A stretch of 63,549 nt of DNA, counting the filler, from Octopus bimaculoides (lineage: Eukaryota), in the NCBI RefSeq assembly GCF_001194135.2. It is 7 parts of 6 records of this genome, joined end to end, with 100 filler letters (N's around TTAATTAATTAA, not from the genome) between each part and the next. Parts side by side here need not be neighbours in the genome. Positions count along the whole stretch, not along the records: positions 55,518 to 61,477 come from NC_069007.1; 6 more parts are not named here. One strand, written 5' to 3'. The notes below the pieces were generated by a model. The model saw nothing but the letters and a program-made list of their open reading frames with translations, did not search any database and was not told where the DNA came from. How positions within the stretch are numbered: the stretch's first letter is position 1; each line of letters begins with the position of its first letter. The position numbers were made by a program, and so were the translations under genes. Shown here one piece after another: positions 56,805 to 56,871 of this stretch.

Positions 56805-56871
56805 CTATTCTAGAGTACGTTCTGCCTTACCTTCGAAACGTCTAGTTAGAATAGAGGCAGCTGACGAAGGA
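56805..56871 (+). ncRNA. Permuted-order hammerhead candidate P1
   Basis: CTATTCTA/TAGAATAG; ACGT/ACGT in register with GAAA; GUU site; CTGCCT/AGGCAG directly before CTGACGA; GGA/TTC. Confidence 0.55.

What the first reader, a model, noticed from the sequence alone, without database searches (positions are those of the whole stretch)
56805..56871. Candidate hammerhead ribozyme with a non-canonical (non-circularly permuted) strand order
All hammerhead core pieces are present and in register, but in the order [stem IIIa-NUH-stem Ia] then [stem IIb-GAAA-stem IIIb] then [stem Ib-CUGANGA-stem IIa]. Seen in the sequence: ACGT 56817-20 pairs with A-CGT 56838-41, placing A15.1-U16.1 correctly. H17 is T56821 (GUU). 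CTGCCT 56822-27 pairs with AGGCAG 56855-60 immediately before CTGACGA 56861-67. A-GGA can pair with TTC before GAAA. An outer 8-bp helix CTATTCTA/TAGAATAG closes the hairpin. Established: types I, II and III are circular permutations only, and stems I and II lie side by side in the active fold. Inference: stem I is covalently tethered to stem II by a 3-nt linker, giving a pseudoknotted cis fold or a dimer in which one copy's CUGANGA strand invades the other's loop. I know of no described hammerhead with this topology.
Basis: partly seen in the sequence, partly recalled or inferred. Interest (0 to 1): 0.9.

Follow-up and report, generated by a model that had tools for sequence, protein, structure and literature searches.

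The report
Probable chance hammerhead-like motif, type SGC
A 55-base stretch of octopus-like animal DNA carries every hammerhead ribozyme core piece in a non-circular order, but that order (type SGC) was described in 2023 and this lone, weakly paired copy is most likely a coincidence.

Summary
On the + strand a cleavage-site block (56817-28), a GAAA block (56832-41) and a CUGACGA block (56854-71) lie in that order within 55 nt. Stem I is 6-7 bp, stem III 4 bp and stem II 3 bp.

The novelty claim is wrong. This order is the "type SGC" hammerhead, found and shown to cleave by Eckert et al. 2023 (PMC10085705). That family also has the roughly 3-nt tether between stems I and II, and an extra base after CUGANGA.

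The candidate fits that blueprint only at its minimum:
- Stem II has one G-C, one G.U and one A-U pair.
- The required fourth helix is at best 4 A/U-rich bp, no better than chance.
- Predicted folds mostly pair the cleavage site and core bases.
- No Rfam hammerhead model detects it, and a model built from published type-SGC sequences scores it within noise.
- It is a single copy in microsatellite- and transposon-rich animal DNA, whereas known type-SGC ribozymes occur only in RNA from metatranscriptomes.

No related sequence could be retrieved, so covariation was not testable.

Verdict: fortuitous motif (about 75%); genuine DNA-encoded type-SGC hammerhead about 10-15%.

The parts
56817..56828 (+). 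Block S. ACGU (16.4-16.1, one strand of stem III), U56821 = H17 (predicted cleavage between 56821 and 56822), then CUGCCU(U) = stem I strand 1.1-1.6(1.7).
56829..56831 (+). S-to-G tether ACC. It is 3 nt, or 4 nt (UACC) if stem I is counted as 6 bp. It joins the far end of stem I to the far end of stem II.
   Evidence: Natural type SGC: 'typically three nucleotides'.
56832..56841 (+). Block G. UUC (11.3-11.1), G12 A13 A14 A15.1 (GAAA 56835-38), then CGU (15.2-15.4).
56842..56853 (+). G-to-C spacer CUAGUUAGAAUA. CUAG 56842-45 can extend stem III by pairing CUAG 56810-13 across a 3-nt bulge. GAAU 56849-52 is the only candidate strand for the fourth helix.
56854..56871 (+). Block C. (G)AGGCAG = stem I strand 2.7-2.1, CUGACGA 56861-67 (C3-A9), an extra A56868, then GGA 56869-71 (10.1-10.3).
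   Evidence: An extra U sits at the same place in all parsed natural type-SGC sequences.
56875..56878 (+). AUUC, possible partner of GAAU 56849-52 (4 Watson-Crick bp) in the position of the helix that joins stems I and II. It overlaps UCC 56877-79, which forms a local hairpin with GGA 56869-71.
56805..56812 (+). A competing hairpin, not part of a type-SGC fold.
   Evidence: pair probability 0.24; mutually exclusive with stem I in the nested ensemble
56818..56821 (+). CGUU, which pairs with GACG 56863-66 as a 4-bp extension of stem I. This buries H17 and core bases G5-G8. It is the dominant predicted (inactive) conformer.
   Evidence: pair probability ~0.6-0.7

Best explanation
This is most likely a fortuitous sequence match. 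A strong 6-7 bp hairpin stem (CUGCCU/AGGCAG) happens to sit next to a CUGACGA heptamer. Nearby GAAA and GUU, with minimal 3-4 bp complementarities, complete the blueprint of the already known type-SGC (non-circularly permuted) hammerhead.

I think it is not a selected ribozyme. If transcribed, the RNA would mostly adopt one of two nested hairpin folds:
- stem I prolonged by CGUU/GACG, which pairs the cleavage-site U and G5-G8; or
- the outer 8-bp helix plus the ACGU/ACGU hairpin.

In both, the GGA of stem II is held in a local hairpin. Little or no self-cleavage would result.

Shown: the match itself, its rarity, the weak helices, the competing folds, and the absence of detectable relatives. 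Inferred: that it has no function.
For: 1. The topology is not new, so the match needs no new biology.
2. Apart from stem I, every helix sits at the bare minimum, as chance matches do. Stem II is 3 bp with a G.U (duplex +1.8 kcal/mol). Stem III is 4 bp. The fourth helix is at most 4 A/U-rich bp.
3. In 30 parsed natural type-SGC sequences stem II is typically 5 bp (-5 to -8.6 kcal/mol in 29 of 30; the one outlier is the A9-to-U variant, 3 bp at -2.5), and the fourth helix is contiguous.
4. The best spacer-by-tail duplex (-4.7 kcal/mol) is matched or beaten by 58% of shuffles. A 4-bp helix in the right place arises by chance 8% of the time (Watson-Crick only) to 28% (with G.U).
5. Evaluated alone, the four helices give -7.8, +2.4, +0.1 and +1.4 kcal/mol. 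Their sum is -3.9, against a nested minimum of -22.0. For validated ribozymes the same comparison is -17.0 vs -22.3 (SGC-1) and -8.5 vs -13.4 (SGC-3).
6. Ensemble probabilities: inactivating extension ~0.7, local GGA/UCC hairpin 0.95. Overall fold z = -0.09.
7. No Rfam hammerhead hit at E<=10, in either the 6-kb or the 171-nt search.
8. A covariance model built from 24 published type-SGC sequences gives the locus 5.1 bits (E 1.6), sixth of 13 noise hits.
9. It is a single copy in the piece with no partner ribozyme. The context is microsatellites, SINE-like and mariner fragments.
10. Eckert et al. searched RefSeq with type-SGC patterns and expected false positives. [quoted passage not shown]
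11. Perreault et al. 2011 state that consensus-conforming hammerheads occur by chance in large databases.
Against: 1. Under a random-sequence model the compact match is rare: about 1.6e-4 per window, or one per 0.4 to 15 Gb depending on how many features are required.
2. These are the 3-nt tether, one extra base between A9 and G10.1, G10.1-C11.1, C15.2-G16.2, and fourth-helix strands spaced 1-2 nt and 3 nt from stems I and II, as in SGC-3.
3. It passes the published false-positive filters: an intact core and paired core-adjacent positions.
4. Natural hammerheads can have 2-bp stems II and weak stems III when a pseudoknot of at least 4 bp helps.
5. A lone pattern match (GCS-1) did cleave in vitro.
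6. U17 occurs in 8 of 30 parsed natural type-SGC sequences.
7. Nearest-neighbour energies ignore tertiary contacts.
Confidence: 0.75

Rival explanations
1. It is a genuine cis-cleaving type-SGC hammerhead encoded in animal DNA, for example in the body of an unrecognised SINE, retrozyme-like or other repeat, possibly a slightly decayed copy.

Stems I (56822-28/56854-60), II (56832-34/56869-71) and III (56817-20/56838-41, extendable by CUAG/CUAG) would form the core. The fourth helix GAAU/AUUC would complete the fold. Cleavage would fall 3' of U56821.
For: - Complete core and correct register.
- Blueprint details match validated type-SGC ribozymes: tether length, extra base after A9, fourth-helix spacing.
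- Low chance rate.
- Passes the published hit filters.
- Short stems II exist in natural hammerheads.
- A single C-to-U change at 56833 would explain the G.U pair (inference).
Against: - All helices except stem I are minimal, and the fourth helix is not significant.
- Inactive folds dominate the predicted ensemble.
- No relatives or second copy were found. These collections do not hold this genome, since the SINE control also failed, so that negative is weak.
- Noise-level covariance-model score.
- Type SGC is known only from RNA replicons, despite a RefSeq-wide search.
Confidence: 0.13
2. It is the remnant of a canonical type III (S-C-G) or 'discontinuous' hammerhead. Its own GAAA/stem III strand downstream of the CUGACGA block has been lost or lies far away, and the GAAA inside loop 1 is a coincidence.
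For: - S and C blocks with a 6-7 bp stem I are in type III order.
- GGA 56869-71 forms its own hairpin with UCC 56877-79, like a closed stem II.
Against: - After that hairpin comes AAGUGG, not GAAACGU.
- No other G block fitting the S and C blocks exists in the 1.9-kb contiguous segment.
- Rfam Hammerhead_3 and the other hammerhead models give nothing at E<=10.
Confidence: 0.03
3. It works only between molecules. Two transcripts, or two tandem units, exchange blocks so that a canonical three-way junction forms without a pseudoknot.
For: - Blocks of neighbouring units of an S-G-C repeat can in principle assemble in G-S-C order (inference).
- Some animal hammerheads may require dimeric conformations (Perreault 2011; the link to Penelope-like elements is my recollection).
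Against: - No tandem or second copy in the piece.
- The helices would be the same weak ones.
- The known type-SGC ribozymes cleave in cis.
Confidence: 0.02
4. The biologically relevant feature, if any, is just the imperfect inverted repeat or hairpin (56805-56854) or the stem I hairpin. It could be a leftover of a transposon end or a structured transcript, with no catalysis.
For: The two nested hairpins account for nearly the whole predicted ensemble.
Against: - An 8-bp inverted repeat within 50 nt is expected a few times in 5 kb (my estimate).
- Fold z-score -0.09.
- No repeat family was found.
Confidence: 0.07

Closest known systems
Type-SGC hammerhead ribozymes (HRIMA-1 motif and type-SGC variants; Eckert et al. 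2023, NAR 51:2850, PMC10085705)
   Same: - Block order S-G-C.
- Full core (CUGAnGA, GAAA, A15.1-U16.1, H17).
- Stem I of 5-7 bp.
- A 2-4 nt tether from stem I to stem II.
- One extra base between A9 and G10.1.
- G10.1-C11.1.
- A spacer of 6-50 nt before block C.
- Room for a helix between that spacer and the tail 1-3 nt after stem II.
   Different: - Stem II is 3 bp with a G.U, against a typical 5 bp in the parsed HRIMA-1 sequences and 4 bp in SGC-3.
- The extra base is A, not U.
- The fourth helix is at most 4 A/U-rich bp, against the contiguous 6-7 bp helices of the validated SGC-1 and SGC-3 (about -7.5 to -7.9 kcal/mol).
- Stem I is strong and unrelated in sequence.
- No sequence or model similarity (5.1 bits).
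- It is DNA of an animal genome, not RNA-only replicons carrying hairpin ribozymes.
- Singleton, with no covariation available.
GCS-1, the single type-GCS hammerhead-like sequence of Caballeronia peredens (same paper)
   Same: - A lone pattern match in a cellular genome.
- A non-circular order.
- No covariation support and no obvious biological role.
   Different: - GCS-1 has strong helices (GC-rich 4-bp stem II, long stem III).
- It was shown to cleave, incompletely, in vitro. The present candidate is untested and much weaker.
Canonical type III and type II hammerheads with a stem I-stem II pseudoknot (Perreault et al. 2011, PMC3088659)
   Same: - Same core.
- Stem II can be as short as 1-2 bp.
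- Helices of 4 bp or more between the stem I side and the bases just after stem II stabilise the active fold.
   Different: - Circular block orders with a true three-way junction.
- Detected by Rfam models, which do not detect this locus.
CChMVd (+) viroid hammerhead with an extra A between A9 and G10.1 (De la Pena & Flores 2001; from memory, not checked here)
   Same: An inserted A at the same core position is tolerated.
   Different: A type III ribozyme in a viroid, with stable stems.

Membership tests
Type-SGC hammerhead ribozyme | Blocks S (site), G (GAAA) and C (CUGAnGA) in that 5'-3' order on one strand | tested here: met
   Script hit 'ACB' = S 56817-28, G 56832-41, C 56854-71. Definition.
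Type-SGC hammerhead ribozyme | Intact core: C3 U4 G5 A6 N7 G8 A9, G12 A13 A14, A15.1-U16.1, H17 not G. The pairs next to the core are formed. | tested here: met
   CUGACGA, GAAA, A56838-U56820, U17. C1.1-G2.1 and G10.1-C11.1 are paired. One inserted A56868; natural members have an inserted U there. Filter criteria.
Type-SGC hammerhead ribozyme | Stem I of about 5-6 bp, joined directly to stem II by a linker of typically 3 nt | tested here: met
   6-7 bp; linker ACC or UACC. Text.
Type-SGC hammerhead ribozyme | Stable stem II (typically 5 bp in HRIMA-1, 4 bp in SGC-3; covarying) | tested here: not met
   3 bp (G-C, G.U, A-U). Duplex +1.8 and in-context +2.4 kcal/mol. Its GGA is in a local hairpin with P 0.95. 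Natural members: 97.5% paired, 4 of 5 pairs covary.
Type-SGC hammerhead ribozyme | Stem III starting with A15.1-U16.1, 4-7 bp | tested here: met
   ACGU/ACGU, 4 bp (+0.1 kcal/mol alone). Optional CUAG/CUAG extension brings it to -2.4.
Type-SGC hammerhead ribozyme | Fourth helix between the G-C spacer and the tail after block C, required for cleavage (mutant M8) | tested here: inconclusive
   Only GAAU 56849-52 / AUUC 56875-78 (4 bp), at the right spacing. Such a helix arises by chance in 8-28% of cases, and the duplex energy equals that of shuffles.
Type-SGC hammerhead ribozyme | Similarity to known members by covariance model | tested here: not met
   Model R1 from 24 published sequences: locus 56815-56883 scores 5.1 bits, E 1.6, sixth of 13 noise hits.
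Type-SGC hammerhead ribozyme | Homologues with covariation in stems I-III and the fourth helix | not testable with these tools
   No relatives in the protein-ORF, metagenome, GTDB or IMG/VR searches. The SINE control shows the protein collection lacks this genome.
Type-SGC hammerhead ribozyme | Context: RNA-only (metatranscriptome) replicons, usually with a hairpin or other ribozyme on the opposite strand | tested here: not met
   Animal genomic DNA with microsatellites, SINE-like and mariner fragments, and no other ribozyme. Context of known members.
Type-SGC hammerhead ribozyme | Site-specific self-cleavage 3' of H17, abolished by a G5 mutation | not testable with these tools
   Needs in vitro transcription, as.
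Canonical hammerhead (types I, II, III; Rfam Hammerhead_1, _II, _3, HH9, HH10) | Circular block order forming a three-way junction; match to the family covariance models | tested here: not met
   Order is S-G-C only. No hammerhead hit at E<=10 in the 6-kb or the 171-nt search.
Repeat-borne animal hammerheads (Penelope-like elements, retrozymes, satellite or SINE-like) | Many dispersed or tandem copies, type I motif | tested here: inconclusive
   No second copy or tandem unit in the 4.9 kb available. Genome-wide copy number could not be tested.

The most novel reading that the evidence does not exclude
This is the first DNA-encoded type-SGC (non-circularly permuted, doubly pseudoknotted) hammerhead in a cellular, animal genome. 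It may be carried by an unrecognised cephalopod repeat. That would show the permutation is not confined to RNA replicons from forest-litter metatranscriptomes.
Probability: 0.12. Interest if true: 0.65.

Novelty: not a real feature. Interest (0 to 1): 0.3.

Why it matters
If it were real, it would move the rare non-circular hammerhead permutation from RNA-only virus-like agents into an animal genome. It would also suggest that permuted ribozymes have been missed by searches built on the three circular types.

As it stands, the useful results are these:
- The 'unknown topology' already has a name, validated examples and defining features.
- A single minimal match cannot be told from coincidence without copies or a cleavage assay.

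Tried and rejected
- Rfam at E<=10 on the piece and on 171 nt: only microsatellite-driven miRNA false hits and one snoRNA noise hit.
- Translating the spurious 132-aa ORF over the locus to fish for repeat copies: nothing. A control with the SINE ORF also found nothing, so this route is blind to this genome.
- Exact-protein look-ups of three window ORFs: not on record.
- A 19-mer pattern in JGI metagenomes and a 17-mer in GTDB genomes: only chance matches with unrelated flanks.
- IMG/VR scans: no hits for the candidate pattern. Two hits for an HRIMA-1 pattern were AT-rich chance matches, so I had no positive control for whether Rfam holds a type-SGC model.
- A mariner fragment used to reach more of the genome: this only led to an unrelated metagenome contig.
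- Canonical type III or discontinuous reading: no downstream G block.
- Minus strand: no motif, and a poorer fold.
- tRNA scan: none.
- The type-SGC variant alignment and the authors' search descriptors are not held as text. My model therefore rests on HRIMA-1 plus SGC-3 only.

Full report
**What is there.** The piece (55518-61477) is draft eukaryotic DNA.
- It has two runs of N (57455-57554 and 59539-60483) and many TG/CA/TA/ATT microsatellites.
- It carries a frameshifted mariner-type HTH_48 fragment.
- It carries two tRNA-derived SINE-like stretches. From memory I recognise these as octopus SINEs. That identification is not tool-verified.

The long ORFs are artefacts that run across N or low-complexity sequence.

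**The observation.** A script I wrote to look for the three hammerhead strands in any of the six orders found exactly one hit in the piece.
- S block: 56817-28, ACGU-U-CUGCCU(U).
- G block: 56832-41, UUC-GAAA-CGU.
- C block: 56854-71, (G)AGGCAG-CUGACGA-A-GGA.

Stem I is 6 WC bp plus a U.G pair. Stem III is 4 bp. Stem II is 3 bp, including a G.U, and needs A56868 to be skipped. This is the only CTGANGA site on either strand of the piece, and no other G block fits it.

**How rare is it.**
- Dinucleotide shuffles of the piece gave 2 hits of this stringency, in any order, in 6000 shuffles. That is about 0.004 per 61.5-kb window. With relaxed stems the rate is about 0.2 per window.
- 62 Mb of Markov sequence gave 10 hits, of which 2 were in this order.
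- An independent-base estimate for the compact form gives one per ~0.4 Gb. This becomes one per ~4 Gb if G10.1-C11.1 is required, and one per ~15 Gb if a 4-bp fourth helix is required as well.

The match is therefore unusual for a single window. It is still of the order expected once in a Gb-size genome or a very large scan. Part of the feature list was also chosen after seeing the data.

**The topology is known.** A literature search found Eckert, Friedrich, Weinberg & Weinberg 2023 (PMC10085705). They divide the hammerhead into blocks S, G and C. They report natural non-circular permutations, above all 'type SGC': 407 HRIMA-1 sequences and 176 variants.

[quoted passage not shown] Cleavage at the predicted site, loss on G5 mutation, and disruption and rescue of all four helices were shown.

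Later papers citing this work in the searchable library do not report type SGC in animal genomes.

**How well the candidate fits that family.** I rebuilt SGC-1 and SGC-3 from the oligonucleotide table and parsed 30 HRIMA-1 sequences from the supplementary alignment.

Shared with the candidate:
- the tether (2-4 nt);
- one inserted base after CUGAnGA (always U in nature, A here);
- C11.1-G10.1;
- U17, found in 8 of 30 natural sequences;
- stem III of 4-6 bp;
- a spacer of 6-50 nt.

A best-case drawing exists in which CUAG 56810-13 / CUAG 56842-45 extends stem III. In that drawing GAAU 56849-52 / AUUC 56875-78 forms the fourth helix, at the same spacing as in SGC-3.

Not shared:
- Natural stem II is typically 5 bp at -5 to -8.6 kcal/mol (29 of 30 parsed sequences). 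Here it is 3 bp at +1.8.
- The fourth helix of the validated ribozymes is contiguous and stable: 6-7 bp at -7.5 to -7.9 kcal/mol in SGC-1 and SGC-3. Here the best spacer-by-tail duplex (-4.7) is equalled by 58% of shuffles. A 4-bp helix in the right place has an 8-28% chance probability.

In my alignment of 24 published sequences the four helices show the expected covariation. A covariance model built from that alignment scores the candidate 5.1 bits, inside the noise. No Rfam hammerhead model responds.

**Folding.** The 91-nt RNA folds no better than its shuffles. The nested ensemble splits between two conformers:
- stem I prolonged by CGUU/GACG, which pairs U17 and G5-G8 (P about 0.7);

GGA of stem II sits in a local hairpin (P 0.95). 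Evaluated one at a time, the four native helices give -7.8, +2.4, +0.1 and +1.4 kcal/mol, against a nested minimum of -22.0. For SGC-1 and SGC-3 the same sums are -17.0 vs -22.3 and -8.5 vs -13.4.

The outer 8-bp helix continues stem III and then runs into stem I with no linker. It cannot coexist with the hammerhead fold. This last point is my geometric inference.

**Caveats that favour the candidate.**
- Perreault et al. 2011 (PMC3088659) show that natural hammerheads often have 2-bp stems II and weak stems III when a pseudoknot of at least 4 bp helps.
- Their false-positive filters (intact core, paired core-adjacent positions, no multiple mispairs) would pass this locus.
- The singleton GCS-1 cleaved in vitro.
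- Nearest-neighbour energies ignore tertiary contacts.

**Relatives.** None could be obtained.
- ORF-based protein search found nothing, and a SINE control showed that collection does not hold this genome.
- Exact look-ups failed.
- DNA pattern scans of metagenomes, GTDB genomes and IMG/VR gave only chance matches.
- No second copy or tandem unit exists in the piece.

Covariation, the test that would decide, was therefore not possible.

**Verdict.** Eckert et al. searched RefSeq and metagenomes with type-SGC patterns and expected false positives. [quoted passage not shown] Given that base rate, the minimal helices, the competing folds and the context, I put:
- about 75% on a fortuitous, unselected motif;
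- about 13% on a genuine DNA-encoded type-SGC hammerhead;
- the rest on a decayed canonical hammerhead, a trans-acting arrangement, or a plain hairpin.

I would give perhaps 25-30% to some detectable cleavage in vitro, whether or not it has a biological role. This figure is my own judgement and is not computed.

Noticed in passing
window 58300-58590 (minus strand): A tRNA-derived SINE-like element. The reverse complement starts GGCGCAATGGCCTAGTGGTTAGGG...GGTTTCGATTCCCAGACCGGGC, with A- and B-box-like motifs. It lies at the centre of the piece. ARAGORN and Rfam call no tRNA. I recognise it from memory as an octopus SINE.
   Followed up: partly
window 60880-61040 (minus strand): A second SINE-like fragment. 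The reverse complement is ...GGCTGTGTGGTAAGAAG...GGTTCAGTCCCA...GGGCCGACCA..., next to a TG microsatellite. It also looks octopus-like from memory.
   Followed up: no
window 57738-58000 (+): A mariner-type transposase N-terminal (HTH_48) fragment broken by a frameshift and stops. The best relatives are unnamed proteins on ENA/JGI metagenome contigs, up to 83% identical. One such contig has the Transposase_1 domain downstream.
   Followed up: partly
window 55633-55757, 56539-56582, 57408-57454, 58721-58880, 60834-60871, 61431-61477: Dense microsatellites: TG/AC, GTAT, (TAT)x53 and TA. All Rfam 'miRNA' hits (mir-466, mir-297 and others, well below gathering scores) sit on TG/CA/TA-rich low-complexity DNA, several directly on these arrays, and are artefacts.
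   Followed up: yes
window 57455-57554 and 59539-60483: Assembly gaps (100 and 945 N). The three 349-407-aa 'ORFs' at 59456-60695 exist only because they run through N.
   Followed up: yes
window 56775-56792 (+): A perfect 6-bp hairpin, TAGTGG-GTCGAT-CCACTA, with a B-box / T-arm-like GGTCGATCC, 25 nt upstream of the candidate. It could mean the ~200-bp unique block between two microsatellites is a truncated tRNA-related SINE body. Not testable without the genome.
   Followed up: no
L083 3370-3435 and L084 102-167: Two IMG/VR viral contigs share an identical AT-rich stretch that matches the HRIMA-1 sequence pattern by chance. It has no stem II complementarity and no Rfam hit.
   Followed up: yes
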